IMG/VR virus record: IMGVR_UViG_3300005965_000002 | Location: 186,001-250,000 of that record | Length of the DNA: 64,000 bases | Reading direction: 5' to 3' (one strand) | The notes under the pieces: generated by a model | Databases searched by the model: none | What the model was told of the DNA's origin: nothing | Seen by the model: the letters and a program-made list of their open reading frames with translations, nothing else | Made by a program: the position numbers and the translations under genes | Part shown: one piece after another, positions 3 to 29,817 of the stretch | Numbering within the stretch: the stretch's first letter is position 1 | Layout of the letters: each line of letters starts with the position of its first letter

Positions 3-890
3 GATGGGACTGTAGGTAAAGGTAAAGAACCAAGTTATCCTGGTAAAGTTTTAAAGGGTTACGTATATAGATTTCAGGAAGGCAGGCTTAATATAAATGA
101 TACAGAACGAGTGCAGTTAGATAGCGTTGTATCAGCTCAGGTAGAGTTAGAAAGAAGGCAGAGAGAGCTGTCGAACGCAAGAGATGAAAGCGCGGTAGAA
201 AAGTTGAACAGGGAGATAAGACAGCTCCAGAACGACATATTAAAAGATACTCTTCAAAGAGCTAATAATATAGTAAGCGGACCAAAGACCACAGGGCTAT
301 ATGATGTTGACTTAGCTCAAAAGAAAGCCATAACTATAGATAATGCAGGGACACAAGATGCAATAGTTTCTAATGAGCTATTAATGATAACAGACGAAAC
401 CGTTCCTTATACCGATTTAAATGGATACAGGCATATAGGGGCTTTTCCTTATGGGGCCAATTTAAAACTGGTAAGAGGCGGAATTACAGATGCTTTTAAC
501 AGAGCGGATGAGACAGATGCACAGGTATCTAGATTAGTCACTGCTGGTCCCTATCAGGAAGTTAAAACTAATGTATACAGGAATAATAACGATGAAACTA
601 TATATCAGTTTGGTAGAGATTCTTTGGAAGAAATAGACGAAAAAACATTTAATCAGCTAATAGAGAACCAGCAAAAAGCAGTGGAAGATGCTGAGCAAGA
701 TAGAAGAAACGGAGTGAAGGTAAGGCCAGATTTTAAAAATGATCCTAACTACAATCCTAAAACTCCCTTAAAAGCGGAGAAAACTACGGATGTTATTGTG
801 AACGCAAGTCCTAGAAATACCGGTGACTCTTCAATAGGTATCAGACCGGGACGCCAAGAGCGGCCTTCATCAGGAAATACCTTAGTGTAA
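3..890 (+). CDS. C-terminal part of a virion structural protein entering from upstream, possibly baseplate hub (5' truncated)
   Basis: The frame of ORF 111..890 is open back to position 3 (DGTVGKGKEPSYPGK...), so the gene starts outside the window. The hub call rests only on position directly before the spike gene and is inference. Confidence 0.45.
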   Translation, partial: DGTVGKGKEPSYPGKVLKGYVYRFQEGRLNINDTERVQLDSVVSAQVELERRQRELSNARDESAVEKLNREIRQLQNDILKDTLQRANNIVSGPKTTGLYDVDLAQKKAITIDNAGTQDAIVSNELLMITDETVPYTDLNGYRHIGAFPYGANLKLVRGGITDAFNRADETDAQVSRLVTAGPYQEVKTNVYRNNNDETIYQFGRDSLEEIDEKTFNQLIENQQKAVEDAEQDRRNGVKVRPDFKNDPNYNPKTPLKAEKTTDVIVNASPRNTGDSSIGIRPGRQERPSSGNTLV

Positions 891-902
891 TAAGGAAAAA
901 AT

Positions 903-2942
903 ATGTTACAAGCAAAAGACTTATCATTAAGTGGTAGAAGAGTTCCTTCGGGTGACAGGCCACCACCAGGCTTCAGAAAACGCAATGATATGACCTTCCA
1001 GATGGGTCTGGTCAGATTAGTCAATGTCGAAAAAATGAGAATGAATATTGAGCTGTTTGATCGTAGGGGTACTCATATTAATATACCGATCAGTCAGCCC
1101 TACTCGGGTCCGGGTAGTTATATAGCTTCTACTCCTGAAATAGGATCAATTGTTTTATTAGCAGTCCAGGAAAATCTAACTATTCCTATAATGTACTTAC
1201 CTAATTATGCTTCAGCTCTTGATCCTACTCATACTCAAATGTGGCCCGATAGCGTTGATATTTTTGCGGATAATGATTACTTCTATAGAATGCCTCAGCT
1301 CCGAAAGGGAGAAATTGGATTAGGATCTTCTGAGGGTATCGATATACTCCTAAATGATAGTTTCTCTGTCCAAAACAGTTTAGGTGATAAGCTTGAGCTT
1401 AGGAGAGCAGATAAATCTTTCATCCTTACCGCAAGAAATAGCTATTTCTTTAATGGCGGAATTTGGCTAAATTCAGGTATAATTTATCGGAATAGTCTAG
1501 GGAAGGAAAACACTCAGGACGGCCAATTTGCCCAAAGGATCCCGCTTGAGGATGGTAGGTCTGCTTTTGCCTTGAAATATTCCGGAAAGGGTGCCGAAGG
1601 TGATTACTTTTCTGAATATTTAATAGAAGCGGAAGAAAAGACTAGTGGGGATGTACCCAGTAACGACGTTAGCCATTATAAGAACATTGGGGCCCGGGTA
1701 CCTATAGCTGTCTTCAGTCTTGGAAACTTTTCAGGAAACAATCCCTATAAGAGAAAATCTTATGGTAAGCTGCTGGGGGTATCTCTATTTAACGACGGGT
1801 TTGCTGAGGATGGCGCTTTTGATTTAAGGGCTTTAAGTAATGAGGATCCAAAGCGCTACGGTATGGCAGTTACTCTGTATAAGCCTGAAAGAAGGAATTA
1901 TGAGACCGGGGCTTTTTTCGGTATAGATAAAGAGGGTCACTTTTATCAGCATATACCTGCAGCTTCTGGCGGAGGTTTAGGGCGAGGACGCTCTATGTCT
2001 ATTCTTGCCAGAGGCAATAAAAAAGAAGTCTGGGGACAAGAGACTCAATACGGAAATTCATGGGATTTAGTCACCGAAGGCGGAATACGGTGGGTAGTCG
2101 GAAGGCATAATGATAGAGAGTCTGATTATAAGCAAAGAAGCATTGATATTAGGACGAGCTCATCTGTTTACTTTCAGTTCGGAGAAGATGTTGATACCTC
2201 TATTTTTGATATTGATACCATTAACAGTAAAAACCCACAACCAATTACCAATTTTAAGAAATACTCTAAGATAGAGCGCCAGGATAGAGCTGAACGAACA
2301 GAGGTTGCTGGTAATAAAGAAGCCATTGTTGGGGGGAGTGATAAACTTCATATTTCTGGAATGAAGCAGGTTGTCATTTCAGGGAGTAATACAGTCCAGG
2401 TAGGTAACGGAATGAACGTTACAGTAGGCGATGTTTACTCAGTTAAGGTAACTAAAGAGTGCCAGGAAACCTTTGGTAGTAGGGTGACTACGATAACAGC
2501 GGGCAGCAATGAGCTCGTTATAGACCCAAAACCAAACCCAGCCCGGGGAGATATAATTGAACGAATCAAAAGCGTTAGGGGAAATAGAACTCTTACAATA
2601 GAAAAAAACGGAAATATCGAAGAAACTATTAATGGGCGGGGAAATAAAGAATTTAGTACTAGAAATGGTAATTTTTCTGCGGATATCGCCACTCGTGGAG
2701 ATATTACTTTAAAAACTAATTCCGGAAAGATAGTTTATGAGACAGGGACAGGTTCCATAGATTTAAGAGGTAGACGAAAGATATTGTTACAGACTGCGGC
2801 TAAAGTAGAACTAGATGGCTCAAGTGTTGAGTTAAAAGGATCTGGCGGGCTGCTCAGTGGGGTGATTACAGAAAGATCCCATTTCGATTATGTAACGGGT
2901 GCTCCTTTGCAGCCCTCACGCACAGTAAAAGCGACTTTATAA
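903..2942 (+). CDS. Baseplate central spike protein (gp5/gpV/VgrG-like), 679 aa
   Basis: N-terminal OB-fold-like segment (GLVRLVNVEK...QPYSGPGSYIASTPEIGSIVLLA). C-terminal ~8-residue V/I-x-G beta-repeats (EVAGNKEAIVGGSDKLHISGMKQVVISGSNTVQVGNGMNVTVGD) typical of gp5 C-terminal helices. AAGGA upstream of the ATG. Confidence 0.8.
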   Translation: MLQAKDLSLSGRRVPSGDRPPPGFRKRNDMTFQMGLVRLVNVEKMRMNIELFDRRGTHINIPISQPYSGPGSYIASTPEIGSIVLLAVQENLTIPIMYLPNYASALDPTHTQMWPDSVDIFADNDYFYRMPQLRKGEIGLGSSEGIDILLNDSFSVQNSLGDKLELRRADKSFILTARNSYFFNGGIWLNSGIIYRNSLGKENTQDGQFAQRIPLEDGRSAFALKYSGKGAEGDYFSEYLIEAEEKTSGDVPSNDVSHYKNIGARVPIAVFSLGNFSGNNPYKRKSYGKLLGVSLFNDGFAEDGAFDLRALSNEDPKRYGMAVTLYKPERRNYETGAFFGIDKEGHFYQHIPAASGGGLGRGRSMSILARGNKKEVWGQETQYGNSWDLVTEGGIRWVVGRHNDRESDYKQRSIDIRTSSSVYFQFGEDVDTSIFDIDTINSKNPQPITNFKKYSKIERQDRAERTEVAGNKEAIVGGSDKLHISGMKQVVISGSNTVQVGNGMNVTVGDVYSVKVTKECQETFGSRVTTITAGSNELVIDPKPNPARGDIIERIKSVRGNRTLTIEKNGNIEETINGRGNKEFSTRNGNFSADIATRGDITLKTNSGKIVYETGTGSIDLRGRRKILLQTAAKVELDGSSVELKGSGGLLSGVITERSHFDYVTGAPLQPSRTVKATL

Positions 2943-3559
2943 TGCCTGTAGTGCCAACAGCTATAACAGCAGCTATTAATGCTCAATTTGCTGCCGTTGG
3001 GTTTTCCGGTAGAAACGACTTTGATATCGCAGTTGCTATTGGTAATGGGGTAGGAAATTACATGATTACTCCAAATTTAGTAACGGGCACCTTATCAGGT
3101 ACAGCGGGCCCTACTTCAAGCGTAAGTAGCTTGGCTGTGATAGGGCTAGTACCCCAAGTAATGTCTGGCTTTATGGTACAAAGAGCAGCCGGAAGCGATG
3201 TTCGGGGTAGAGATGTCTTTAAATTTTTTAATGCCGTATCTACTGGGATAGTGACCGTGCTACAGACTGCTTTTTTAACAGGTACCGCTGTAGGGATAGG
3301 GCCTGGTGGAGGGATAGGGAGATTCACCACCGTTAATGAACAGGCTATTTCCAGTCTGGTTAATGCACAGTTTGTGGCTAAAAATATAACGGGCAGGGAT
3401 GCATTTAAGATAGCTAATGCGATAGGATTTGGTATCGCAAACCATTTAAGAACGTCAGTTACTTTTTCATTAGTAGCTATGGGAGCCGTAGCGCCTGTTC
3501 CGCCTGTTGGTCCGGTACCAGTCGCTGGGATTCCTACTGTAACTACAAAGATTAGTTAA
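2942..3559 (+). CDS. Small Gly/Ala-rich structural protein made of three internal repeats; candidate spike-tip protein
   Basis: TAATG overlap with the spike stop. Three ~65-aa repeats, each containing G-R-[ND]. Confidence 0.6.
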   Translation: MPVVPTAITAAINAQFAAVGFSGRNDFDIAVAIGNGVGNYMITPNLVTGTLSGTAGPTSSVSSLAVIGLVPQVMSGFMVQRAAGSDVRGRDVFKFFNAVSTGIVTVLQTAFLTGTAVGIGPGGGIGRFTTVNEQAISSLVNAQFVAKNITGRDAFKIANAIGFGIANHLRTSVTFSLVAMGAVAPVPPVGPVPVAGIPTVTTKIS

Positions 3560-3570
3560 TAGAGGATTAC

Positions 3571-6500
3571 ATGTCATCAGAAGTATATAATTTAGTAACG
3601 CTTGATGTAGACAAAACAGTTACTCGCGGGGCAAGAGTCAGTTTTAAAAATAGCCCCACGACACCTCCCCTTATTGCAGTAGCGGATGCGGACCTATGCT
3701 GCACAGGCGCTAACTATTTAGTTCGTTCCTCTTTGGAAGGTAACAATCTTAAAGGTTATGCCAAATTTAATAAAAATAGTTCATTAGTGGAAAACGTTAC
3801 CGGAATAGAAGGAATTACCGGTGGAGATATAATTAGAAATGATTCCGATAATACTTTCTATACTGTAACAGGAATACAGGGGGATAGCCTCTATTTAACT
3901 TCTCGATACCAGGGGGATACCTCTGAAGGGCCAGCGACTCTTAGAAAAGTCAGACTAGGAAGCGCAAAATTCGAGTATTTAAAAAGTTATCAAGATGATA
4001 ACACTTTAGTTTATAATCAAGCAGATCAGGTATGGGAGCCCCTAGGCATCGAGATGAAGGGCCCTGTTGAAACCAGTAGCTCAGTATTAAAACCCTTTAG
4101 CGGAGACGAGCTAGGAATTCAGTTTCAAAAATCGGAAAACCCGAATGAGCCAGATTTAGCCACGGTAAAAAGTGTTTATAAGACTTTAGTATCAAGGACT
4201 CAAAGAGAGATACAGGATCTTTCTTTATCCCCTATTCCATACCCCCACGAAAGCCTAAAGGTTTATTTTGGCCCTGATGGTAATGTGGAATTAAAGGAGG
4301 AAGGAAAAGATTATGTAGTAAACTATTCTTCTAACCCTACTCTGTTATCTTCCCATCCACCTTTTGAAGATAGACAAGTTGCTTATATCAAATTCCTGGA
4401 AGAATTAGACAATACTACTCAAATAGAGTCTTTAGCTGGAAACTTCCCAGGTTCTTTCAGTATTATAAAGCGAGATGTCATTCCCGGGTCAGATGATTTA
4501 GTAACACCCATTCAGGATATTATATCGGGTACCGAAGACATTAAAGTTGGAGGTGAGACTCAGACCAGGTATAAGGATTATGACATCGATTACCCAAGTG
4601 GTAACGTTACCTTCATTGAGCATCAGAATTCAGAACTACTAATAGATAATATCACTTTCCCCACCAATTTGATTTGGGACGGGGTTAGCATAATAAGGGG
4701 TGTGACTAAGGATAAAGTAGAGGATGAATCAAATCTAATAATCCCACCAGTAACAGGTTTACCAGGAATTTCCGAAACACTATACTTCGAAGATAATGAT
4801 TCTAGAGCATTGGTAAAAAACGCTGACTATATACTAGAGTACAATTCTGGAGCTATAAGCATAGAAACAGATCTGGAAGAAGGAAGCGCACTACTACTTT
4901 CATACTTCGTAGAGGGAGAGGATCAAGAAAAAGAAGACCTGCCGCTTACAAACATTAGAACTGATAAGTTTCCTATACAACCGGACACATTAACGTTAAT
5001 CAAAAAATGGCGCAACAGTGAAACTCAAAAAACGGGTACTACAGTTTTAGTAGAGGGCGTGGATTATGAGATATTTTATTTGACAGGAAAAATTAGATTA
5101 TTGCGGACTATCGAAGGGGAAGAGATTAGGAGTTTGCAGGCCACATATACGCCCCTTACTCAGATAAATGCGATAATCCAGCCTACAGGGTCCCCAGGAT
5201 TTTATCAGTTTACTTTAGTAGATGATATTCTTGATAACGTGGATGTAAGCAATCTCAGGTTTCTGGTGAGAAACCCATCGGTATCAATAGCCTCTGAAGA
5301 TCCCTTTAAGGACGCTGGTGATCCTGATAGGTATAGCTTTGAGAATGATATAGAGCAGATTACTGCTGTAAAAATAAGAGGGAAAGAAGAATTTAATGTT
5401 GAAGATATTAGTTATGATCCTAAAACAAAAGAGATACAACTAGGTAAATCCCAAAATGCTGAGATAACAATGGAGCAGTATGACGTGGCGTTAGCTACCT
5501 ATAGGTACACGTCTGACACTGTTCCTTACGCTCCTGTTATACCCTTTTTCCCAATTTTTGCTGAGGGAAGTGACTCTTTTGTTATAGAGGGGTTTGATAA
5601 GACAGATGTTATTAGAACAGGGATGGTGATTCGGATAGATAATTTTGATCCGGAGAATACATACTATTTCAAAGTGAAATCGATATCTTATGATGGGGAT
5701 AATACCACAGTAACTATCTCAGGAATTTTTCCCGAAAATATTACAAATCCAACATTTTTCTTGTTTGATGATTTTATTACATGGGAATCTTTGCCTAGCG
5801 GGACACTAGTGGACAGAACGTCCTTAATAGGTTCGACACAGCTACGGTTCAAGAATAACCCGCTCTCGGTATTAAATCAAATGCGTAATGATAAGATACT
5901 GATGATCAATGATTCCTTTATCCATACTATTCTGTCAGCCGAAGTAGATGAAAGTGATCCGGATATCATAAATGTTTCCGTATTCCCAGCCCTACAGGAC
6001 GCGCCCTCTGGCACTGTAGTGGTGTCAAACACTCCCGTATATTCTGAAGGGGATACTGATCTTTTTGCAGAGTATCCTGTCTTGGATGACCCGGCAGAGC
6101 CTGCTTTTAGAATATCTTATAATGCTCCTGAAGGTTATGAGGGATCCGGAACTATAGCGGTGGATACAGAGAAGATCATACTTAGGGAGAACGTAGAAGG
6201 TAATGTAAATCCTAACTCTTATGAGTATAAATTTAGCGACTATTCTAATATTCGGGAATTAGCTGAGGCTATTGATGATACCCAGTCTACTTTTCCCTCT
6301 ATTAATAGTAAGATACCAAGTTATAGGCCTTTTACTTTTAACCCCGATGGGGTTGAAGAGTACTACCTGCCATCAAATAATTATAGCGCAGATTTAGTTA
6401 TTCCTTTCGAAGAAGGAGAAAAAGAAAATCTGCCTTATATGATCACAGTAACTCCCGAGTTATTTAAATGGAAGCTCGTTAGTGCCTACAAGAACAGGGA

Positions 6501-9500
6501 ATATTTCGAGGTAGAAGACAGAGACAGGACCGACCTTTTTAGTTCAGGAGCTCTGATAGCCTTTAAGACCAGAGATACGGGTACTGATTATTTTTACGAA
6601 GTAAAAGAATCAGAGTACGACGACAGCAGTGATCCTGCGAAGACAAAAGTAACCATTAAAGGGACTTTTTCTGATAATTTAATTAATCCCTATATTTATC
6701 GTTATGCTCGGCCTTCTTGGAGGAATGTTGTTACTGATATTGTGTCTATAGATAGGGATAATTCTATAGTTATTTTTTCAGGTGACATCTCTAGAACTGT
6801 AAAAGTAAATACTTTGGTGAGATTTGGTAGTACTTATGTTTATTCTATAAATAAAATAGAAGTTATTTCTGGAAATACTTTGGCATACTTAGAACCAAAC
6901 ATAGATCTAAATGTAAGAGATGAAAAATTTTTTAACTATGTTGAGTTTTCTGATGTCCCTGTAATTCTAGATGGAGTTACCAGACAACCCAATTTTACAA
7001 TTACTTACAAGGCTCCTAGCGGGTATGTGGGAAAAGGCTATGTTGAAATAACAGATGATTTTTTAAAACTTACAGAAGTTTTAGATGGATCGAAAAGCGC
7101 TGACAAAGAGTTTAAGTTTTCGGACTACAATGATCTTAACCAACTAGTAGCTGACATTGATTCTTTTGATGACTTTAACATCCCAGGATATTCCCCTTTT
7201 TCTGCTGATGCGAGCGCCTACGAGGAAGAGCTTGAAGCTGGTAAACTGGAAACATTTTCTTTAGCAGAGACTCCAAAGACAGAAGTTTCGTATAATGTAA
7301 AAATTGCTAAATCTACATTTGAAATTACTTACACAAGCCCTGTTGGATATAGCAATACGGCTAAAATTGAGTTTTACAGTGACCAGATGAAAGTAATCGA
7401 ATCCGGATCTGGAAGCGATATTAAAACTTCTACCATAACATTTGTCGGGAAATCCATATATGACATAGTATCTGAGATTCAAGATATTGAATCTTTAGTG
7501 CCTGGTAACAATCCTTTTTCGGTTGACCTAAAGAATACAGAGGAATTTGTAGGTAGAGGCGATCCAGGTAAATATCAAGTTGCAGGGAACCCGGAAAAGG
7601 TTACGCTAGATAATCCTTATCGAGTAAAATGTATTGTTTTTGAAGATTGGTGGTCCCAACTTATACGGATTAATGAAAATAGATTAGTGGAAAACAATGA
7701 TTATACCATTGAAGGGGGCTCTGTTGTACTAAGTGATACAGTAGAAAAAGGTGATAGATTCCGAATAAGCTATATGGGACTAGACACCTTACCGCAGAGT
7801 GGTGGAGAGGCTATTACATGTAGCTGCAGGTTTATCTCAGTTCTGCCTGAAGGGTACAGAGTCGATGTTTATATGGATTATTTAAATATCGATCAATTTT
7901 ACCTACAGACTCTTACTGAAAGATTTTTCTTAGAGATAGTCACAGCCCCACAGGTTGAACAGTTATTAAGGACAAAAACCGGTGGTGGTGGTAACGGTGC
8001 AGATACTGGAGATAGCGGGGAGATTCCGGTATACGAAGGTGGAGCAGTCAATAGTCAGTACCGGCTTAGGGACGAACAGATAAAGAAAGAACTATATCTA
8101 AAAATATTTGAGTGGTACAAGCAGCGTCGGAGGAATTTTACCTCTGAGGCTCAGTTAATAATGGGATTTAAATACGGCAACTGTCCCCATGTTGCTTATC
8201 AGGACGGGAGGTTTACTTTATCGGATAGCGCTGTTGAGGGACCTCAATACTCAATGATCACTAATAGCGATATAGAACAAATTAATAATGACTCCTCTAG
8301 ATTTTTCCCTCTTGGGTATGATGGCAGTGCTCCTGTTTATATAGACAGATTAGGTGATAAGTATATATCCTATAACGAAGTCTATCCTTACAATGTTAGG
8401 TATGTTTTCGAGGATGGATCTCCTGATGTACTAGAGGGTAGAGTCAAGTCCGTAAATCCTTATTGGACTCAAAATTTAGATTTCGAAATTTTGCAAAATG
8501 AATCCAATACTATTGTGGCACCGTATAATATGCCATTTGAGGAGTATGATAGAACATTCTTTTCCGACGATAAGAAGACGAACTTTTTGAAGAGAATTTC
8601 AGTAGGTGACAAATTTAGGATAGAAGGAAAGAAAAACAGGTATACCATAGGAAAAATAGAAGTAGGTAAGGATAGTAGAGTAGGAGGCACTTATGAAGTG
8701 CTGGTTATGGAGGACGGTAAGTATTTCACTGAAAGCGGCATTCAGACAATTGCTATACAGGTAAAAGAAGATGGAAGAAAAGTAAGGGAAGAAGTAGTAA
8801 AAGAATTTTTTGGTGACCAGGTAAAAACAAAAAGTTTTTCAGAATTTGAGTCCTTCTATGCAGGAGAAGGCTATAAATTAGAGGTGCAAACATTTAATCC
8901 AGCTTTTTTCCCAGCGTATGATGATAATTTTAATTTGGGTGTAAAGATAGAAGGAAAAGACATTGATGGGAAGGTCCCAAATAAAAATCAAATCAAAAAA
9001 TTTGGGCGTTTTAATTTCTTTGCTGCTCTTTTTGCGCTAGTACCTGGCGAATATGATCCAGCAGAAAACTTTAGATTACAAGCCGGGCACTTAGATGAAG
9101 ATTCTTTGACTTTCGTGCCTGAAGAAACTATTACTGTAAACATCGCTGATTTGAATTATTTCCAGGAAAGAAATGTAATTAACGTACAGGACGCTCTGTA
9201 TAAGAATACGGATGGTGACGCTGATGATAATGATAAGCCTGGGTTGAGTAAATATTTCTATCTTTCCCTGGAGCGCGTATACGTAGCAGGCTCAGAAGAA
9301 GGATATGTAGAAGGATTTGTTCTTAGATCAAGGGATAAAAATAAAGTCTTTAGATTTTTATTAGAAGATGGATTAGACGTAGCTGACCAGTATGGATATA
9401 GAGATATTGATGAAACTACGGGCAATAGTATAGTATACGAAAATTTCTATGATCCCAATAATATTTATAGATGGCTTCTTAAAGAGCAGCAGGCATGGCT

Positions 9501-12500
9501 TACGGAGGAAGCAATAATTAGAGATGTTTTTGATGTAAGCGATAAAATTGGTAGAGCTTTTGAGGCCGCTATCCTAAACGGATCCATAAGTGGTTTTAAA
9601 GACGATCTTATAAGTATAAGTAATGTACTAGATGTGAGAATCCCAAGGTATATGGACCACTTACTATTCCTTACCGGAATGACTTCGGAACAGGGTCCTA
9701 TTGAAAGGACAATGGAAGAGGTTATTATCTCTGAGACTGGTGAGCTTAGTTTTGCTTCCCCTGCTATTAAGGAATCTTATGAAGACGCAGCAGGAAAGAC
9801 AGGGACAAAAGGAGCAATCCAGGTATATCAGGATTTTTTGAATGAGCAGAATTTAGCGATATCGGTAAATGCTAGTAACAGGTCTATATGGATCACGGAC
9901 TATATCAGGTGGGTTTTGAGCCTAAATGAAGGAACGGTTTTTCAGAAAGAAGCACGCAGGCAGTACGATTTGTTGAGGCAAGATATTGATATAGGTTTCT
10001 TATCTTTTGATGCTGTGTCTTTGCGGTATAACCAGAACCCGGAAGCATATCTATTATCTAATCCTAAGTACGGAGTTTATAGCTATTCTAATTCTGGCCC
10101 GTCATTAGTGCTCCAGGTAGAAGCAGACAGTGTAAGTAATTCAGAAGATCAAGGTGTCAGAACATTCGTATTTCCATTTAGAGAGCACACAACCCTAAGC
10201 TCGTTAATTTCAGCCGTAAACAGCCAAGCTAAAGTTGGTAATGAACAGCTCTTTTCTGCTCAGCTAATCTTTGCTCATTACCCTAAAGGAAACTATACAA
10301 CTCAGAGGTTGGTATATACGGATGGTTTATTAAGCATAGATGATGACACTGTCTCGATACAGGCTTCTAACGTTTCTGACCACAGAAAAAATGATAGTAG
10401 AGTGCTTTTCCTTGATAAACGTAGGGAGCAGCGTCTTATCCTCGATAATGCCGATAGTACCGCTATTGAGCCGTTTCCTACTTATGTAAGTAACGGAGAC
10501 CCAAATAAGAAATTCATAGACGATCTGAATATTAAAGTACCCGGCAGGTGGGCTCGGGTACCGGAAGATTTTCCTGAAGGCTATTTTGATGTCCTTAAAA
10601 TAGGTCCTTATAATTCAAATTGGTCTATTTCCTATACCTTTGAAGATACTTATAAGGATGGAACAACAAGGGACGACATTACTACGCCAGAAGATGTTAT
10701 CGATAGGTATAACGAGCAAAGCCGGGTAGATATAGATAAAGATACATGGGAAGTTCTTCTATCTCGTGGTAACAAGAGTCGCCCCGAGACTTTCCTCTTG
10801 AAGAAATTAATAATCACGAAGAAAGGCGTTACCTCGTTCGATGAGGAATTCGACTTAAGGAGATACGAGGATATCTCCAGTCTTGTTACCGCTATTAATT
10901 CTGCTAAAGATGATCAGGGTAATAGGCTTTTCAAAGCCGAGGTCGTAGGAGAAGAAAACATTCAAGGCAGAATGAAAAGTTATGAGCTAAAGGCGGACTA
11001 TGAGAGGCAGATATTGAAGGTATTAGTTGGGGTAGACGTAGATACTACCGATACTGAATCAGTCCAATATTATCTAAGAGATTTTCCGGTGGGATGGAAG
11101 GTGGCAACTGTAGAATTAGACCCGGGGCAAACCGCTACTATAGAAATTAACCCTAAAAGATATAGTTTACTTGAAAATTATGCTTTTTTACCGGAGCCCC
11201 CAGAGCAGGCCCGGGATACCGCTCTTTCTAACCAGAAAATAGATATTTTGCCTTTTGATCTTTATACATGGGCGGAAAACGGGTCATATAAAATCGAGTA
11301 CGAGGTGTCTGGGGACACAGTAATCAAAAATAGTTTAATACTATCAAGCGATAGAGGTACTTGTACGATACCTCTCAAGGAAGAAGAGCTTTTATACGAT
11401 TATTCTGGTGACGGCAAGGGTTTAATTAACAGGATCAACAGAAATCCTGATTGTAACAGGTATTGGTATGCAAATCTAAAATTTGGAAGAAAGGGAAAAA
11501 ATAATTTTGTGTACACCTATCTTCCTAAGACTAAATCTACCTCTGTGCCTAAAGCATCTTTAGAGGATTTATACCTGGATAAAGATTCTGCTTTAACAAT
11601 AGAATCCGATGGGATCAATTTTGAATATCAGGTAGTTCCTACGGATACTCTACCATCTCCGATAGATCTAGACACAGTATATGAGTCTAAGCAATTAAAT
11701 TTAGAAGCTGATATAGGTGCTATAAGGTTAAGCTTTGGGGATGGGTACACTAACAGTACTCAGGGGACTTACACGATAGACGGAACAGCAGAGACCCTAT
11801 CTTTTTCAGTGAGCTATGAGTATGATTATGAATATTCGGTATCATTTAATCTATCATCTTATACCTTAGACGACTTAAAAGATGCTATTAATGGTGAGCG
11901 GGATCCTGTTACTAATACTGATTTATTTAACGCTTCCCGTGGCGTAGGGGTGCCAGAATCTGAACCAGCAAGTAAGTTGGTTGTACAGTCAGGGGATCTT
12001 CCGGGTACGTTGCTGAAATCTGATTCTCCTTCTGAGGCTATAGTTATTTCCTTATTACCCCCGGATCCTTCGTACACGGTTAGATCGGCTAGGTATTCTG
12101 TATCCCCTGGTGGGACACTTACATTACAGGCTACCTTAAGGTACACAGGAACATTTAATCCTCCTGCATTTAATCTATTAAGCGCGTCTTATGGTACTTT
12201 GCAGAATCTTACTGAGGCTATCGGAGACCTAAAACCGGATTCAGCCTTTAATAGTATATTTAATGCTGAGCTGTTAATACCAGATGATGATTCTACTGAT
12301 TTATTAGATTCGGGAGGCGCTCAAGCGTTAGGGGAGTTCTCATATTTACGTTTACAATCAGTTAAATCATACGATATTACTAATATTACTTTAAACGGAT
12401 TAGTATCCTCTATTAACAATGATGCTGATAGTACCGGGTTTACGGCTACCGCTGTTGAAGGGTATGGTACTTATCCAGCTAAGTATTTAGTGCCTAGTTC

Positions 12501-13236
12501 TACGGCACAAACTGCTGATGAATCAATAGAGCTAGTAATTGATTTAAGAAATCAGACGGGATTGCGGCTGTTGAATATGGACACACCAGCATCCTATGAA
12601 GTTAGCGGTACTGGTTTAAATAAGAGTTTGACTGTAAATAAAGATAATAAAACAAAAGTTTTTAAGCTTACGACTAAACAGCTTAACACTATTAGAGATA
12701 ACTTATCTGGTAGTGTGCTGTCAGGATTACAGGAGATAGGAATATACCCAATACTTCTAGAAAGTAATCAGTTCGGCTTACTAAATAATGTTGATAGTAA
12801 TGATCTACCAATAAATGCTCCTCCAAGTTCTGGAGCTCATGTTTATTTTGGATTTCTTTCTGACATCCGTTTTTATCAGATTTCTGATAAAAATTTGGAT
12901 GCACAGCTATCGTACATTAAACGTAGGCTGGCAAAGCCCTGGAAAGACAGCGAAGGTAATTTCATTCCCGATTATTATAATAGTGATAATTACTATGACT
13001 TTGAGTACGGAATTAGTAGGGATCAATTTTTAAGCTTTTTAAGGGATACCAGGTTTACACAATTAGCCAACAGCATAATAAATGAAGAGCTTAATAATAA
13101 AGCCTATCTGTGGCTTTATTTAAAATTTCACAGGGAGTTCGGATGCGACCAACAGGTAAAGGTACTGACCAAACAGATAGAGGAAGACGAGGAGTCAGGA
13201 AATCAACTGGGGATAGCACCAATAAGTGGAGAGTAA
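3571..13236 (+). CDS. Giant (3221 aa) repeat-rich virion/baseplate protein
   Basis: Uninterrupted 9.7 kb ORF with GAGG upstream, between spike and wedge genes. Repeated L-x-E/K-x-x-DY-x-I-x-Y-x-x-G modules and repeated F-x-L/F-x-x-Y-x-x-L-x-x-L-x-x-AI[ND] modules. Confidence 0.7.
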   Translation: MSSEVYNLVTLDVDKTVTRGARVSFKNSPTTPPLIAVADADLCCTGANYLVRSSLEGNNLKGYAKFNKNSSLVENVTGIEGITGGDIIRNDSDNTFYTVTGIQGDSLYLTSRYQGDTSEGPATLRKVRLGSAKFEYLKSYQDDNTLVYNQADQVWEPLGIEMKGPVETSSSVLKPFSGDELGIQFQKSENPNEPDLATVKSVYKTLVSRTQREIQDLSLSPIPYPHESLKVYFGPDGNVELKEEGKDYVVNYSSNPTLLSSHPPFEDRQVAYIKFLEELDNTTQIESLAGNFPGSFSIIKRDVIPGSDDLVTPIQDIISGTEDIKVGGETQTRYKDYDIDYPSGNVTFIEHQNSELLIDNITFPTNLIWDGVSIIRGVTKDKVEDESNLIIPPVTGLPGISETLYFEDNDSRALVKNADYILEYNSGAISIETDLEEGSALLLSYFVEGEDQEKEDLPLTNIRTDKFPIQPDTLTLIKKWRNSETQKTGTTVLVEGVDYEIFYLTGKIRLLRTIEGEEIRSLQATYTPLTQINAIIQPTGSPGFYQFTLVDDILDNVDVSNLRFLVRNPSVSIASEDPFKDAGDPDRYSFENDIEQITAVKIRGKEEFNVEDISYDPKTKEIQLGKSQNAEITMEQYDVALATYRYTSDTVPYAPVIPFFPIFAEGSDSFVIEGFDKTDVIRTGMVIRIDNFDPENTYYFKVKSISYDGDNTTVTISGIFPENITNPTFFLFDDFITWESLPSGTLVDRTSLIGSTQLRFKNNPLSVLNQMRNDKILMINDSFIHTILSAEVDESDPDIINVSVFPALQDAPSGTVVVSNTPVYSEGDTDLFAEYPVLDDPAEPAFRISYNAPEGYEGSGTIAVDTEKIILRENVEGNVNPNSYEYKFSDYSNIRELAEAIDDTQSTFPSINSKIPSYRPFTFNPDGVEEYYLPSNNYSADLVIPFEEGEKENLPYMITVTPELFKWKLVSAYKNREYFEVEDRDRTDLFSSGALIAFKTRDTGTDYFYEVKESEYDDSSDPAKTKVTIKGTFSDNLINPYIYRYARPSWRNVVTDIVSIDRDNSIVIFSGDISRTVKVNTLVRFGSTYVYSINKIEVISGNTLAYLEPNIDLNVRDEKFFNYVEFSDVPVILDGVTRQPNFTITYKAPSGYVGKGYVEITDDFLKLTEVLDGSKSADKEFKFSDYNDLNQLVADIDSFDDFNIPGYSPFSADASAYEEELEAGKLETFSLAETPKTEVSYNVKIAKSTFEITYTSPVGYSNTAKIEFYSDQMKVIESGSGSDIKTSTITFVGKSIYDIVSEIQDIESLVPGNNPFSVDLKNTEEFVGRGDPGKYQVAGNPEKVTLDNPYRVKCIVFEDWWSQLIRINENRLVENNDYTIEGGSVVLSDTVEKGDRFRISYMGLDTLPQSGGEAITCSCRFISVLPEGYRVDVYMDYLNIDQFYLQTLTERFFLEIVTAPQVEQLLRTKTGGGGNGADTGDSGEIPVYEGGAVNSQYRLRDEQIKKELYLKIFEWYKQRRRNFTSEAQLIMGFKYGNCPHVAYQDGRFTLSDSAVEGPQYSMITNSDIEQINNDSSRFFPLGYDGSAPVYIDRLGDKYISYNEVYPYNVRYVFEDGSPDVLEGRVKSVNPYWTQNLDFEILQNESNTIVAPYNMPFEEYDRTFFSDDKKTNFLKRISVGDKFRIEGKKNRYTIGKIEVGKDSRVGGTYEVLVMEDGKYFTESGIQTIAIQVKEDGRKVREEVVKEFFGDQVKTKSFSEFESFYAGEGYKLEVQTFNPAFFPAYDDNFNLGVKIEGKDIDGKVPNKNQIKKFGRFNFFAALFALVPGEYDPAENFRLQAGHLDEDSLTFVPEETITVNIADLNYFQERNVINVQDALYKNTDGDADDNDKPGLSKYFYLSLERVYVAGSEEGYVEGFVLRSRDKNKVFRFLLEDGLDVADQYGYRDIDETTGNSIVYENFYDPNNIYRWLLKEQQAWLTEEAIIRDVFDVSDKIGRAFEAAILNGSISGFKDDLISISNVLDVRIPRYMDHLLFLTGMTSEQGPIERTMEEVIISETGELSFASPAIKESYEDAAGKTGTKGAIQVYQDFLNEQNLAISVNASNRSIWITDYIRWVLSLNEGTVFQKEARRQYDLLRQDIDIGFLSFDAVSLRYNQNPEAYLLSNPKYGVYSYSNSGPSLVLQVEADSVSNSEDQGVRTFVFPFREHTTLSSLISAVNSQAKVGNEQLFSAQLIFAHYPKGNYTTQRLVYTDGLLSIDDDTVSIQASNVSDHRKNDSRVLFLDKRREQRLILDNADSTAIEPFPTYVSNGDPNKKFIDDLNIKVPGRWARVPEDFPEGYFDVLKIGPYNSNWSISYTFEDTYKDGTTRDDITTPEDVIDRYNEQSRVDIDKDTWEVLLSRGNKSRPETFLLKKLIITKKGVTSFDEEFDLRRYEDISSLVTAINSAKDDQGNRLFKAEVVGEENIQGRMKSYELKADYERQILKVLVGVDVDTTDTESVQYYLRDFPVGWKVATVELDPGQTATIEINPKRYSLLENYAFLPEPPEQARDTALSNQKIDILPFDLYTWAENGSYKIEYEVSGDTVIKNSLILSSDRGTCTIPLKEEELLYDYSGDGKGLINRINRNPDCNRYWYANLKFGRKGKNNFVYTYLPKTKSTSVPKASLEDLYLDKDSALTIESDGINFEYQVVPTDTLPSPIDLDTVYESKQLNLEADIGAIRLSFGDGYTNSTQGTYTIDGTAETLSFSVSYEYDYEYSVSFNLSSYTLDDLKDAINGERDPVTNTDLFNASRGVGVPESEPASKLVVQSGDLPGTLLKSDSPSEAIVISLLPPDPSYTVRSARYSVSPGGTLTLQATLRYTGTFNPPAFNLLSASYGTLQNLTEAIGDLKPDSAFNSIFNAELLIPDDDSTDLLDSGGAQALGEFSYLRLQSVKSYDITNITLNGLVSSINNDADSTGFTATAVEGYGTYPAKYLVPSSTAQTADESIELVIDLRNQTGLRLLNMDTPASYEVSGTGLNKSLTVNKDNKTKVFKLTTKQLNTIRDNLSGSVLSGLQEIGIYPILLESNQFGLLNNVDSNDLPINAPPSSGAHVYFGFLSDIRFYQISDKNLDAQLSYIKRRLAKPWKDSEGNFIPDYYNSDNYYDFEYGISRDQFLSFLRDTRFTQLANSIINEELNNKAYLWLYLKFHREFGCDQQVKVLTKQIEEDEESGNQLGIAPISGE

Positions 13237-16520: not shown

Positions 16521-17270
16521 ATGTCACAAGATTTTAAAATACAGAATAGATGCGATCATAAGATAAATTGGGAGGAAGGAACTCTTTCTTCTGATAGAAA
16601 ACGCATAGATGTCACTTATCGAATAGCTTCTAAATCATCTGTTTCGTTACGAATAAATAATGTAGCTATTCCAACCTCGAATTATAAAATAGTAAAAGAC
16701 GTAACGGTAGTCGATACTGAAAAGCCTTTTTATATACTAATGAACAATAAAATAAGGCATAATAACCCTCTGGTCGAGGTAAAGTACGTAACTTTTTTAA
16801 ATAGATGCCCAAAATGCCAGGGTACTAAATTTTTGGATGATATTGCTTATAGTTCATCTGGGGATATTACACAAGTAAAAGATGAATTTTTATTGTTACA
16901 AACAGTAGAGAAGTACATAGTTACAAATATAAGAAGTAACAAATTTCATTCTTGGATGGGAACTAACCTCCATGAATTAGTAGGTACAAAGATACTGGAC
17001 ATGGAATTACTACGGAATAAAGTTGTAGATGAAGTAAACTCGGCTATAGAAAAGCTAAAGGATATTCAGAGGCAGTTAGTCTCTACCGGAAGGCCGGTAA
17101 GTGCGGGTGAGCTTTTTGGTGAATTGATATCAGTAGACCTCACCCAGGATTTCGAAGATTTAAGCATAATATCAGTAACCGTAAGATTTACAGCTCAAAG
17201 CGGAAAAAGGCTAAACTATACGCAATTACTGGAGCTGGCAGATCTAAGGCAAAGGATTAACTTCTCATGA
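16521..17270 (+). CDS. gp25/GPW-like baseplate wedge protein with N-terminal extension
   Basis: LLQTVEKYIVTNIRSNKFHSWMGTNLHELVG matches the gp25-family core. It lies directly before baseplate J. The N-terminal part carries C-D-H and C-P-K-C. Confidence 0.7.
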   Translation: MSQDFKIQNRCDHKINWEEGTLSSDRKRIDVTYRIASKSSVSLRINNVAIPTSNYKIVKDVTVVDTEKPFYILMNNKIRHNNPLVEVKYVTFLNRCPKCQGTKFLDDIAYSSSGDITQVKDEFLLLQTVEKYIVTNIRSNKFHSWMGTNLHELVGTKILDMELLRNKVVDEVNSAIEKLKDIQRQLVSTGRPVSAGELFGELISVDLTQDFEDLSIISVTVRFTAQSGKRLNYTQLLELADLRQRINFS

Positions 17271-20200
17271 CTATAGCTGCTCCTATTATTGAGTACCCTA
17301 TGACCGATTGGACTGGCAGCGGTACTGATAAATATTACACATCTGAATTGATACAGATAATATCGGGCACTGTTCCTGTGACTACTGCTGACGTTCAGGA
17401 ACTAGGCTCTATAATTACTGTAGAGTTTAGGTACAGAATTACCTCAGGCGGCACTACTTCGCCTTATTCTAACTTTAGCAATGCTGGAATCACAGTAGGT
17501 AGCACTCTTAGCACGGCTACTGAAATTCCCTGGTCGCTAAACACAGAAGGTATAGTTAGCTTCGATGTTGATGATACTATAGAGTTTGAATTAAAAACAG
17601 TAAAAAGAATTTCAAACAATCAGGGTGCTGGTTATGTATCCGAAGAGAGCTCCCTATCAAAGGTAACAGTAGGGATTATTGCAGAAGATAAAATCACGGC
17701 TTCTGTCATAGAACCTACTGGAACCAGATTAGAGCGTGCTAGGGATTACATAAAGGTATTTGTCCCGGTTAATTCTTTAAAGACAAACAGAGACAATGAT
17801 CTTGTAGGCGTAAACTTTTACATTTCATTAGATGCCGGTGGTGGAGTAAACGGTTACCAAAAGATAAATCAATCCTATATTGTTGAAGCAGATGTGTCGG
17901 AAACAGAATCGGAAGTATTACAGGTTTCATCAACGGAAGATACTACTAATAACCTGACGGTTACAACTACAAAAACCCGTCAGGTGCAAAGAGAGTACGT
18001 AACTTACACTATCAATTCAACAGTATTGAATAGACTTGTATCCGAGAATAAAATTAGGAATGTATTTTTGGATAACGATGCTACTTTAAACCCGGACATA
18101 GTTTATTATTTTGTAACCACTGCTCTTTCCTTTGATAAGTCATTAAAGCAGGTCGTCGAGAGTAATTACTCGGTTGAACTTGAGGGTGAATTCCTGGAAT
18201 ATGCTACAGATTTTCAAAGCATACCGGGTAGAAATAATTCGGATATAATTTTTTCTGTAACAAAAACTCTTACTACTGATAATAATACTGTTAATGTAAT
18301 AGGCGGTTCTGTTGTAAGAGACATATTAGATCCCGTAGCATTAGAATTTTCTAAGTATTACATAATTCAGGATTTTATATTCAAGACGCTATCAGTGGAT
18401 ACGCTTATAGATTTTGACGACGCCGATGGAGATGGTGTCAGTGATCCCATCGAAACTAATATAGATAAGCGAAACTTAGCCGACGCTCTCGGGATTAGGG
18501 ATGGGGCAAATTTACAGTTAATTATAAATGAACAGTTCGATAAAAGAGCTGCAAACTGCAATATCACACGACGAGATCCGATACAGGCTACAGGTAAAGT
18601 AACTTTTTTTGTATCGAATGCCCCGACAAATGATATAATCATTCCAGCAGGTACTCAGGTAAGCACAGCGGCTGACCCGACTACGGGCTCAACATCCGTG
18701 GCTTTTACTGTAGTAGGGACAAAATTAATTGATTCTTCAAATCCTGACTTTTACTATAATCCTACTTTAAGAAGATACGAAATTGAGGCTGACGTAAGGG
18801 CTGTGCTCGGCGGGTCTCAAGGTAATGTACCAGCTGGGTCTATAGAAAGAGCTACTGGATTACCTAGTAATATCCAGGTAACTAATACTAATCCCACTAA
18901 CTACGGCGCTAATAGAGAAACTAATAGAGAGTTGTCCGAAAGAATAAAGCTAGCTATAGCTGGTGTGGATTCAGGTACAGAGGGTGGCTACAAGAAAACG
19001 AGCGAAAGCGTTCCCGGGGTACAGCAGGCCCGAGTAGAAAAAGCTGGTGATGAATTAATGGTTAGAGATTTGGATATCTCCAGCAGAAGACATTTGGGCG
19101 GTAAAGTAGACATATACATTAAAGGCGAGAGAAGACGCCAATACATTGATCAGGTAGCCTTTAAATTTGAGTACCCCACCGACACATTCGGTAAGCTCAG
19201 CGGGGAGAGATTTTACGTAATTAATGCTAATGAATTTAGAATCCAAACCCGGAATACAAAAGTTACGGCCACTAATCCTATTATTTCGGTTTCTAATGTT
19301 AGAAATGTAACTAGAGGATCAGATTATGATATAAGCGGGTACCGTATTATAGGGGATGGGGATACCGTAATTTTAGAAAATAATCAGACCAATAATAGAA
19401 TAGGTATGGCTACATTAGATGTGATAGAGGTAAACTACAGCTATCGAAGCTCTAATGTAATTACTCTGGAACATCAACCCGTAAATACTATTATTTCTGT
19501 AACTGATTCAGATGGTAATCTGGTAGATGAAGCAGAATATAGGTTAGTGAGACTGGAAGATCCGCTGCTAACGGGGGAGTCCTCTATTTCTAAATATGGT
19601 ATAGAATTCTTATTCGACTCTCAAAATGACGTAAATGAATTTAGACAGATAGATGATGAGCAACATGACATGTTTCTCGATATACCGATATCTTTGTCTT
19701 TAAAGGGTGTAGATATTGATTCCATTACGGTTTTGAACGCGGATGACGAATCCATAGTCTATAAAAAAGATATAGACTATGAGGTTACCGGAGGGACGCA
19801 GGTCATACCAACACAATTATCCCTGCTGCCTAATAGTGCGATTAGGCAAGGACAAAGAATCTCTGTATCTTATAGAGCAAATGAAAATTTTGAGGTCACA
19901 TACCAAGCCAACTCATTGGTTGAGCAAGCTCAAGAAGAAGTAGAAAAGTTAAAGCACGCAGATGCCGATGTTGTTGTTAAACAAGGGATAGGAAATAGAG
20001 TCGATATCAGCGCCCGTGTTATAAAAGATGGAAGGTTAGATAGTAGGTATTTAGAATCTGATCGAACTGTTTTAAAATCTAGAATACAAACAGCCGTAGC
20101 TAACTATGTACAAAAGCTCAGGATGGGGGAAACCTTTACTCAGGCCTCACTGGTAAATGTTATCCGTAGCGTACCTGGGGTAAAAGATATAAAATTGCCC

Positions 20201-25143: not shown

Positions 25144-25146
25144 TAC

Positions 25147-29753: not shown

Positions 29754-29760
29754 CATTAAA

Positions 29761-29775
29761 CCATGATCTATTAAT
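29761..29775 (+). promoter_or_regulatory. Candidate late-promoter motif CCATGATCTATTAAT
   Basis: Shares the ATCTATTAAT core with the other copies. Lies in the 64-nt gap before the 2xPKD gene. Confidence 0.5.
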
Positions 29776-29817
29776 ATTTTTCCCTTATCATTACATGCAG
29801 CGAATAGATGAGGGAAT

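What the first reader, a model, noticed from the sequence alone, without database searches (positions are those of the whole stretch)
2942..3559. Pseudo-threefold small protein coupled to the spike gene: a non-PAAR spike-tip candidate
Seen: three repeats, AINAQFAAVGFSGRNDFDIAVAIGNGV / FMVQRAAGSDVRGRDVFKFFNAVSTGI / LVNAQFVAKNITGRDAFKIANAIGFGI, each followed by a Gly-rich beta segment. The start overlaps the spike stop (TAATG) and there is no PAAR motif. Known: trimeric spikes are capped by a monomer with internal pseudo-threefold symmetry (PAAR, T4 gp5.4) encoded next to the spike. Inference: this is an unrelated, hydrophobic, helix-containing solution to the same job.
Basis: partly seen in the sequence, partly recalled or inferred. 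Interest (0 to 1): 0.6.

Follow-up and report, generated by a model that had tools for sequence, protein, structure and literature searches.

The report
Non-PAAR cap for a phage spike
A 205-residue protein made of three internal repeats, encoded right after the tail-spike gene of a huge uncultured phage, belongs to an unannotated viral family that is predicted to sit as one copy on the tip of the three-chain spike, doing the job usually done by the unrelated PAAR proteins.

Summary
ORF 2942..3559 (+) encodes a 205-aa protein whose ATG overlaps the stop of the upstream 679-aa gene (TAATG). It has three real internal repeats: profile-profile P values are 2e-9 to 4e-11, with scores of 46-56 against 18 or less for shuffled controls. 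Each repeat is modelled as helix, G-R-D turn, helix, beta hairpin (AlphaFold2 pLDDT 82).

It matches no Pfam family, has no PAAR motif, and matches no solved fold. It belongs to a family of at least 182 clusters of about 200-aa proteins. Every member looked up is a metagenomic "hypothetical protein".

The upstream gene is a gp5-like beta-helical spike. In 20 of the 22 places examined (the window and 21 related loci), the family member lies directly after a spike gene or within two genes of one. These spikes range from 222 to 740 aa, and most share a C-terminal motif (...H-x-D-Y-I-T-G-A-P...).

A 3:1 complex prediction passed: ipSAE 0.75, best control 0.00. The three G-R-D turns each touch residues 661-667 of one spike chain.

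Verdict: a probable new, non-PAAR spike-tip family, supported by computation only. The contig is a 258-kb fragment of a huge phage from hypersaline lakes, and no PAAR gene was found on it.

The parts
3..890 (+). C-terminal 295 aa of an 826-aa gene (genome 184410..186890) directly upstream of the spike. It is conserved in this position (811-857 aa) in related loci. It may be the hub partner, but its function is not established.
   Evidence: only a faint PHROG hit
903..2942 (+). Central spike gene, 679 aa, gp5-like beta-helical trimer
   Evidence: All 10 aligned homologs hit Pfam Gp5_trimer_C (best 8.9e-5) and 8 of 10 hit phrog_430, the gp5 hub/lysozyme family. The C-terminal profile's PDB hits are mostly spikes of contractile injection systems, including VgrG, the PVC spike and phage central spikes, all at weak E-values. 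The gene lies between the sheath and Baseplate_J genes.
2292..2837 (+). Beta-helix part of the spike (residues about 464-645)
   Evidence: Range of the Gp5_trimer_C and phrog_430 matches. Repetitive G-N-x strands are visible in alignment A3. The trimer of residues 520-679 was modelled with pLDDT 80-91.
2859..2933 (+). Conserved spike C-terminal motif G-V-I-T-x-x-S-H-x-D-Y-[IV]-T-G-A-P-L-x-x-S-x-T-V-K-A (residues 653-677). The predicted contact residues 661-667 are at nt 2883..2903.
   Evidence: H660, D662, T665, G666 and A667 are invariant, and Y663, I664 and P668 nearly invariant, in alignment A3. A clear version of the motif ends 16 of the 19 tabulated spikes (222 to 690 aa) found beside family members. 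Interface.
2942..3559 (+). Spike-tip candidate, 205 aa (P0001), with start codon overlapping the spike stop
2948..3145 (+). Repeat 1 (residues 3-68): helix, G-R-N turn, helix, beta hairpin. Predicted spike contacts are residues 20-29 (nt 2999..3028).
3146..3331 (+). Repeat 2 (residues 69-130). Predicted spike contacts are residues 86-95 (nt 3197..3226).
3332..3556 (+). Repeat 3 (residues 131-205), including the near-invariant A-P-V-P-P-V-G-P hairpin loop. Predicted spike contacts are residues 148-157 (nt 3383..3412).
3571..13236 (+). Giant 3221-aa gene directly downstream. Large genes (877 to over 3300 aa) hold the same position in the closer relatives. Its function is unknown, and it is not shown to be part of the spike-tip pair.

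Best explanation
ORF 2942..3559 encodes a monomeric cap for the tip of the phage's trimeric central spike.

The protein is one chain built from three diverged copies of a unit of about 65 residues: helix, tight Gly-Arg-Asp turn, helix, Gly-rich beta hairpin. One molecule therefore offers three equivalent faces. In the predicted complex, each turn docks on the conserved F-D-Y-V-T-G-A loop (residues 661-667) at the C-terminal end of one of the three spike chains. This matches the 3-fold spike with a single pseudo-3-fold cap, as PAAR and T4 gp5.4 do, but with an unrelated alpha/beta fold and no metal site.

The six helices would form the base that faces the spike. The three hairpins would point away from it and form the distal end that meets the host envelope. 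This orientation is an inference, drawn from which residues do and do not appear in the interface. The gene is translationally coupled to the spike gene.

Shown: the repeats, the family, the synteny, the co-occurring spike motif, and the absence of PAAR on this contig. Predicted: the 3:1 binding and its interface. Inferred: presence in the virion, and a role in stabilising or sharpening the tip and in first contact with the membrane. The unusual hydrophobicity and basic pI are suggestive of the membrane role.
For: Internal threefold repeat: hhalign P 2e-9 to 4e-11 against shuffled scores of 18 or less. The AlphaFold2 model has 3 x (helix-helix-hairpin) at pLDDT 81.8, pTM 0.77.

The upstream gene is a gp5-like spike. 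It sits in a sheath ... spike ... Baseplate_J tail module.

Complex prediction: ipSAE 0.75 (runs 0.73/0.75/0.76), best of three controls 0.00, verdict 'supports binding'. That mark was reached by 58 of 80 solved complexes and 2 of 110 mismatched pairs. The runs agree in at least 97% of contacts, and partner pLDDT is at least 74.

On the cap side, the interface holds three of the family's eight nearly invariant glycines (G23, G89, G151). On the spike side it holds the invariant or nearly invariant D662, Y663, I664, T665, G666 and A667, flanked by H660 and P668.

Synteny: the family member follows a spike gene directly (gap -1 to +65 nt) in the window, L001-L013, the P0002 contig, L019, L023, L024, L026, L028, L029 and L031. 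It lies one or two genes after the spike in L020 and L025.

Sixteen of the 19 tabulated spikes, ranging from 222 to 690 aa, end with a clear version of the same motif. In LR745208 the two genes are 243 kb apart, but both are kept and the spike-like gene ends in a related motif.

The spike has no HxH motif near its C-terminus. By the rule cited in PMC12407873, such spikes are expected to carry a separate tip protein. No PAAR or PAAR-like Pfam match exists on the 258-kb contig.
Against: Nothing here is experimental. Presence in virions is unknown.

The complex score is the model's own confidence, and it used my own shallow alignments (10 and 18 rows), which lie outside the tool's calibration. 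I could not inspect coordinates, so the orientation of the hairpins is inferred only from the contact list.

The full-length spike monomer model failed (pLDDT 37). The identification of the spike therefore rests on weak but consistent profile hits.

The contig is estimated to be only 55% complete, so a PAAR gene could lie off-contig. I also had no positive control for detecting gp5.4-type tips.

The G-R-D turns are not conserved in distant subfamilies, where only the Gly is, and no clean covariation with the spike motif was seen.

In LR745208 the family member is not next to the spike.
Confidence: 0.6

Rival explanations
1. It binds the spike C-termini, but as an assembly factor. It would act as a trimerisation clamp or chaperone that templates or protects the three chain ends during folding and then leaves, so it would not be part of the virion.
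For: The predicted 3:1 interface, the synteny and the translational coupling fit this reading as well as they fit a structural cap. Beta-helical phage proteins often need dedicated folding helpers; this rests on general knowledge and was not tested here. In some loci a small Zn-ribbon gene sits between the spike and the family member, which shows that the module can hold accessory genes.
Against: By the account in PMC12407873 and PMC13250141, proteins encoded in this position that bind the spike end (PAAR, gp5.4, phiKZ gp163.1) are virion components. A single-chain pseudo-trimer is the solution expected for a permanent 3-to-1 symmetry adaptor. Length (185-210 aa) and architecture are strictly conserved over at least 182 clusters.
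Confidence: 0.15
2. It is a tail or baseplate component, or an ejected protein, that does not contact the spike tip. It might instead bind the hub, the tape measure or the giant downstream protein. On this reading the complex prediction is a false positive favoured by matching symmetry.
For: The score is a model's confidence obtained with untested alignments. A giant gene always follows in the closer relatives. In LR745208 the family member is unlinked from the spike.
Against: All three controls scored 0.00, and the runs agree in at least 97% of contacts. The contacts fall on the most conserved residues of both proteins. Distant members with no giant neighbour still sit beside small spikes that carry the same C-terminal motif.
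Confidence: 0.13
3. It is an integral membrane protein expressed in the infected cell, for example a holin-like or superinfection-exclusion protein, and is not a virion part.
For: GRAVY is +0.63, about 3.7 sd above the genome's ORFs. The best structural neighbours are membrane transporters, though only at Z 4-5.3. One relative gave a marginal holin PHROG hit at E 0.0012.
Against: The modelled helices are 14-19 residues long, and a third of the chain is beta hairpin. The best 19-residue hydropathy window is only 1.75. The Z scores lie below the tool's stated noise level for helical proteins. The gene is embedded in, and translationally coupled within, the late tail operon in about 20 loci. A specific complex with the spike is predicted.
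Confidence: 0.05

Closest known systems
PAAR-repeat proteins, including T4 gp5.4 and phiKZ gp163.1 (Shneider et al. 2013 from my own knowledge; PMC12407873; PMC13250141)
   Same: A single chain with internal pseudo-threefold symmetry, encoded right after the spike gene. [quoted passage not shown]
   Different: No PAAR motif and no Pfam PF05488 or PF13665 match. It is twice the size, at 205 aa against about 95. The modelled fold is alpha/beta (six helices plus three hairpins), not an all-beta cone. No PAAR structure appears among the fold matches. It has no Cys and one His, so no Zn site is possible. It contacts the spike through loop turns on a dedicated spike motif. It is strongly hydrophobic.
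RB43 orf205w, a putative non-PAAR spike tip (PMC12407873)
   Same: A precedent for a phage replacing PAAR with an unrelated protein encoded in the same locus. Its first 220 residues are described as an alpha/beta mix.
   Different: It is about 690 aa with a long helical tail. The family profile finds nothing in the RB43 genome even at E <= 10. Its own structure and binding are still unresolved.
Fused apex domains of P2 gpV and phi92 gp138 (HxH iron-binding tip; Browning et al. 2012 as cited in PMC12407873)
   Same: The spike here also carries a short conserved C-terminal element beyond the beta-helix.
   Different: No HxH motif, only a single conserved His (H660). The element is predicted to be a docking site for a separate cap, not the final tip.
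phrog_5576 (PHROG family of unknown function, 65 positions)
   Same: 30 of 134 family members match it, best E 2.2e-13. Its length equals one repeat unit.
   Different: P0001 itself does not match. The matched stretch is only about 25 residues of the second helix of a repeat. The family has no annotation, and I could not retrieve its members.

Membership tests
PAAR-repeat superfamily (Pfam PF05488 / PF13665) | Sequence match to the PAAR profile, i.e. P-A-A-R-like repeats | tested here: not met
   No Pfam hit for P0001 at E <= 1. No PAAR family appears among the top Pfam families for 134 relatives. No PAAR motif is visible in the sequence.
PAAR-repeat superfamily (Pfam PF05488 / PF13665) | All-beta conical fold with a Zn site near the apex (His/Cys ligands) | tested here: not met
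   The AF2 model holds six helices and three hairpins. The protein has 0 Cys and 1 His. No PAAR chain appears in the Foldseek or VIA lists.
PAAR-repeat superfamily (Pfam PF05488 / PF13665) | Internal pseudo-threefold symmetry in one chain | tested here: met
   hhalign between thirds gives P 2e-9 to 4e-11, with controls scoring 18 or less. The secondary structure is periodic.
Spike-tip protein (functional class, any fold) | Gene next to the central spike gene | tested here: met
   Directly downstream of a spike gene in the window and 17 loci or contigs, and within two genes in 2 more. One locus (L022) shows no recognisable spike in the fetched stretch, and one genome (LR745208) has the pair unlinked.
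Spike-tip protein (functional class, any fold) | [quoted passage not shown] | tested here: inconclusive
   Prediction only: ipSAE 0.75 against best control 0.00, with a symmetric three-site interface. There is no experiment, and the alignments lie outside the tool's calibration.
Spike-tip protein (functional class, any fold) | Present in the virion at the tip (about one copy per particle) | not testable with these tools
   No cultured phage with the family was found. tblastn of five members against 50,697 phage records gave nothing. Only the uncultured record LR745208 matches the family profile.
gp5/VgrG-type central spike (for the upstream gene 903..2942) | C-terminal trimeric beta-helix | tested here: met
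   Gp5_trimer_C hits in 10/10 homologs (best 8.9e-5, below Pfam's cut-off) and phrog_430 hits in 8/10. PDB profile hits are mostly CIS spikes. The trimer model has pLDDT 80-91.
gp5/VgrG-type central spike (for the upstream gene 903..2942) | N-terminal OB-fold domain | tested here: inconclusive
   The full-length AF2 model failed (pLDDT 37). Only residues about 30-100 form moderately confident strands. The small spike in L020 gives a weak Phage_base_V OB hit at E 0.0027.
Self-tipped spikes (P2 gpV / phi92 gp138 type) | HxH iron-binding motif near the C-terminus | tested here: not met
   No HxH appears in the last 45 residues of any of the 19 tabulated spikes.
Integral membrane protein | Hydrophobic helices long enough to span a bilayer (about 20 residues) | tested here: not met
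   Modelled helices are 14-19 residues. The maximum 19-residue hydropathy is 1.75. No dedicated transmembrane predictor was available.

The most novel reading that the evidence does not exclude
A widespread, entirely unannotated family of alpha/beta pseudo-trimeric proteins (at least 182 clusters at 50% identity) is a second, independent evolutionary solution to capping contractile-tail spikes. It would co-evolve with a dedicated spike C-terminal docking motif (...D-x-I-T-G-x-P...) and replace PAAR across a large clade of uncultured phages, from about 35-kb genomes to huge ones. Its hydrophobic, basic body may take an active part in entering the host membrane.
Probability: 0.5. Interest if true: 0.72.

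Novelty: new variant of a known kind. Interest (0 to 1): 0.62.

Why it matters
Spike tips are the first part of a contractile tail to meet the host envelope. For T4, the tip protein decides whether some LPS mutants can be infected (PMC12407873). PAAR tips are also the handle used to load cargo on T6SS spikes and on engineered injection systems.

Nearly all known tips are PAAR proteins, and the one reported exception (RB43) is unresolved. A second tip family would do three things:
- It would fill a gap in the annotation of many uncultured and huge phages.
- It would give structural biologists a defined pair to solve.
- It would offer another attachment module for engineered contractile injection systems.

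The family comes with a clear fold prediction, a defined docking motif on the spike, and a testable 3:1 interface.

Tried and rejected
- The full-length spike monomer fold was unusable (pLDDT 37).
- tblastn of P0001, the spike, and four distant family members against 50,697 phage records found no match.
- The family profile found nothing in Tunturi_5, phage G, RB43 or Nostoc phage A-1(L). Tunturi_5 gp243 is also 205 aa, but this is a coincidence.
- phrog_5576 gave no match in four phage genomes.
- A PDB sequence search with the family profile gave only noise: an uncharacterised protein at E 0.024, and globins.
- Fold searches found nothing meaningful. Foldseek against PDB gave E of 0.32 or worse. 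The wide VIA search gave at best Z 5.3 to membrane transporters, below the tool's noise level for helical proteins. BFVD gave one unnamed 207-aa viral protein (E 5e-3), probably a family member. ESM Atlas returned only viral hypothetical clusters.
- The near family has no relative in 185,579 prokaryote genomes.
- I looked for simple covariation between the G-R-D turns and the spike motif and found none. The spike Asp stays where the cap Arg-Asp is lost.
- The membrane-protein reading was considered and judged unlikely (see rivals).
- The Pfam DUF3842 hits in 2 of 134 relatives were judged incidental.
Full report
**Setting**

The window is bases 186001-250000 of a single 258,580-bp virus contig. 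CheckV rates the contig about 55% complete, so this is a fragment of a huge phage. All large ORFs run on the + strand.

Upstream of the window lies a tail sheath gene (phrog_2839, E 1e-28). Inside the window, ORF 17267..20665 is a Baseplate_J protein (E 1.3e-17). Its nearest relatives are in a 485-kb uncultured phage (LR745208), the 309-kb phage Tunturi_5, and phage G. The finding therefore sits in the baseplate part of a contractile-tail operon. The DNA is held by hypersaline-lake and microbial-mat metagenome runs from five studies.

**The observation**

ORF 2942..3559 encodes 205 aa (P0001). Its ATG overlaps the TAA of the 679-aa ORF 903..2942 (TAATG).

I compared the three thirds of the family alignment by hhalign. 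They matched at P 1.9e-9, 3.5e-11 and 1.6e-10, with scores of 46-56. Reversed or column-shuffled targets reached at most 18. The repeat is real and is not an effect of the Gly/Ala/Val-rich composition.

AlphaFold2 with the 18-row alignment gave pLDDT 81.8 and pTM 0.77, with three copies of helix, helix, beta hairpin. The protein is unusually hydrophobic (GRAVY +0.63; genome ORFs -0.46 +/- 0.30). It is basic (pI 10.5), has no Cys and has a single His. There are no Pfam or PHROG hits and no PAAR motif.

**The family**

A word-based search found 17 homologs of 43-68% identity, all about 205 aa and all from metagenomes.

A profile search of 1.84 billion cluster representatives found 182 clusters at E <= 1e-3 and 69 at E <= 1e-10. 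Nearly all are 185-210 aa and match end to end, so the three-repeat architecture is fixed.

In the 134-member alignment, the nearly invariant positions are glycines: G23, G89 and G151 (one in each helix-helix turn), and G53, G56, G59, G122 and G181 (in the hairpins). The Arg-Asp that follows the turn Gly is conserved only in the closer subfamily.

Thirty of the 134 members match phrog_5576, a 65-position PHROG of unknown function that is about one repeat long. The Pfam scan gave no meaningful family.

Every cluster member looked up is a metagenomic 'hypothetical protein'. ESM Atlas neighbours are viral hypothetical clusters of about 200 aa with the same predicted fold; one of them is 62% bacterial, mainly Myxococcota.

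No solved structure resembles the model. Foldseek gave E of 0.32 or worse. The exhaustive VIA search gave at best Z 5.3, below its stated noise level.

**The upstream gene is a spike**

All 10 aligned homologs of the 679-aa protein hit Pfam Gp5_trimer_C (best 8.9e-5), and 8 of 10 hit phrog_430, the T4 gp5 family.

A profile of the last 80 residues hits mostly spikes of contractile injection systems in the PDB: the AlgoCIS spike chain, a phage Gp5, the A-1(L) central spike, the PVC spike and VgrG. E-values are weak and the matches lie in the beta-helix part.

The full-length monomer model failed (pLDDT 37). The trimer of residues 520-679 was modelled with pLDDT 80-91 inside the complex job.

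The spike has no HxH motif near its end. By the rule summarised in PMC12407873, such spikes are expected to carry a separate tip protein. No PAAR or PAAR-like Pfam match exists on the contig, though the contig is incomplete.

**Synteny**

I examined 22 places: the window, 20 related loci or contigs, and the genome LR745208.
- In 18 of them (the window, L001-L013 apart from the identical L005, the P0002 contig, L019, L023, L024, L026, L028, L029 and L031), the family member follows a spike-like gene directly, with gaps of -1 to +65 nt. For P0041 and P0060 the upstream gene is cut by the contig end, but it is long and adjacent; these two are not counted.
- In L020 and L025 the spike lies one or two genes upstream, with a small Zn-ribbon gene in between. 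Together with the 18 direct cases, this gives 20 linked places.
- L022 has the Zn-ribbon gene directly upstream but no recognisable spike in the fetched stretch.
- LR745208 is the other exception. Its family member lies beside an HNH endonuclease at about 227 kb, and a spike-like gene lies at about 470 kb.

The spikes range from 222-aa gpV-like proteins (weak Phage_base_V OB hit) to 740 aa. Of the 19 tabulated, 16 end with a clear version of one motif: G-[VI]-[IVL]-T-x-x-x-[HD]-x-D-x-I-[TS]-G-x-P-x-x-[GS]-x-T-V. The L003, L019 and L028 spikes keep only a T-G-x-P or I-T-G remnant. The LR745208 spike-like gene ends in a related sequence...D-L-D-P-L-T-G-I-P-F....

In L020 the gene order is spike, Zn-ribbon gene, family member, gp25-like wedge, J-like wedge. 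The family member therefore occupies the slot where PAAR genes usually lie in small myophages.

**Complex prediction**

I submitted three copies of spike residues 520-679 plus one copy of P0001, each with its own alignment. The scores were ipSAE 0.73, 0.75 and 0.76. All three controls scored 0.00 (two unrelated partners, and one unrelated protein in place of the spike). The tool's verdict is that the model supports binding but does not show it.

That mark was reached by 58 of 80 solved complexes and 2 of 110 mismatched pairs, although my alignments fall outside the calibration. The runs agree in at least 97% of contacts, and partner pLDDT is at least 74.

The interface is what a symmetry adaptor should look like. 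Residues 661-667 (F-D-Y-V-T-G-A) of each spike chain touch residues 20-29, 86-95 and 148-157 of P0001. These are the three helix-helix turns, one turn per chain. They include the most conserved residues of both families.

The hairpins are absent from the contact list. From the topology I infer that they point away from the spike and form the distal end. I could not see coordinates, so this stays an inference.

**Comparison with what is known**

Functionally this is a spike tip, like PAAR, T4 gp5.4 and phiKZ gp163.1 (PMC12407873, PMC13250141). By sequence, size, fold and lack of a metal site it is not a PAAR protein; the membership rows give the tests.

A non-PAAR tip has been proposed once, for RB43 orf205w (PMC12407873). 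The family profile finds nothing in RB43. It also finds nothing in Nostoc phage A-1(L), whose baseplate structure shows a small spike with a C-terminal loop and no tip (PMC10966104).

I found no paper describing this family. The paper library does not hold most subscription journals, so this is not proof that none exists.

**Verdict**

The interpretation passed both of its own refutation tests. The most likely reading (about 0.6) is a new, non-PAAR, pseudo-trimeric spike-tip family that docks on a dedicated spike C-terminal motif.

The main alternatives are a spike-end assembly factor that is not in the virion (about 0.15), another tail component with a false-positive complex (about 0.13), and a membrane protein (about 0.05). 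All the evidence is computational, and the decisive work is biochemical and structural.

Noticed in passing
window 3571..13236: A 3221-aa ORF starts 12 nt after the tip candidate. Large genes (877 to over 3300 aa) hold the same position in the closer relatives, but not in small-phage relatives. The only family hit is a sub-threshold Flagellin_IN match. Whether it is a fibre, a baseplate part, or cargo carried by the tip is unknown.
   Followed up: partly
L020 2088..2396; L022 4647..5000; L025 4586..4993: In three distant loci, a small Zn-ribbon-like protein (102-135 aa, C-D-[IV]-C-G-K ... C-x-[DE]-C) is encoded immediately upstream of the family member, between it and the spike where a spike is present. 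It has no Pfam or PHROG hit. It may be an accessory or assembly factor.
   Followed up: partly
LR745208.1 about 226745-227293 (-) and about 470.5-472.6 kb (-); loci L017, L018, L033, L034: In this 485-kb uncultured phage, the family member sits next to an HNH homing endonuclease. It lies 243 kb away from a spike-like gene that still ends in a related C-terminal motif (...D-L-D-P-L-T-G-I-P-F...). The pair is unlinked but both genes are retained.
   Followed up: partly
window 2859..2933 and spike C-termini in L001-L031: Most spikes of very different length (222-690 aa) share a C-terminal motif of about 25 residues (...[HD]-x-D-x-I-T-G-x-P-x-x-[GS]-x-T-V...). It has no PDB sequence match, and it marks spikes that come with this cap family. 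It could serve as a search key for the system.
   Followed up: partly
phrog_5576 versus family members (e.g. P0046 residues 150-175): The only library family that touches this protein family is a 65-position PHROG of unknown function, about the length of one repeat. This raises the possibility of single-repeat relatives that cap a spike as true homotrimers. Its members could not be retrieved.
   Followed up: partly
window 20668..30288: Downstream baseplate and fibre genes carry cell-surface-binding modules. These are a 1491-aa protein with BNR/YCF48-like propeller repeats (E 4e-31), a collagen-repeat plus PKD protein, a weak GT2-like 173-aa protein, and two PKD-rich proteins (E 2.5e-63 and 4e-29).
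   Followed up: no
whole window and genome G000: The contig is 258,580 bp, about 39% GC, and estimated 55% complete. All large ORFs of the window lie on one strand, with steadily rising cumulative GC skew. Near-identical DNA occurs in hypersaline-lake and microbial-mat metagenomes from several studies. IMG/VR holds an 81-kb fragment with an identical copy of the gene (L005).
   Followed up: partly
L014 17879..18496 (Tunturi_5 gp243): Tunturi_5 has a hypothetical protein of exactly 205 aa in its baseplate module. The family profile does not match it, so the equal length is a coincidence.
   Followed up: yes
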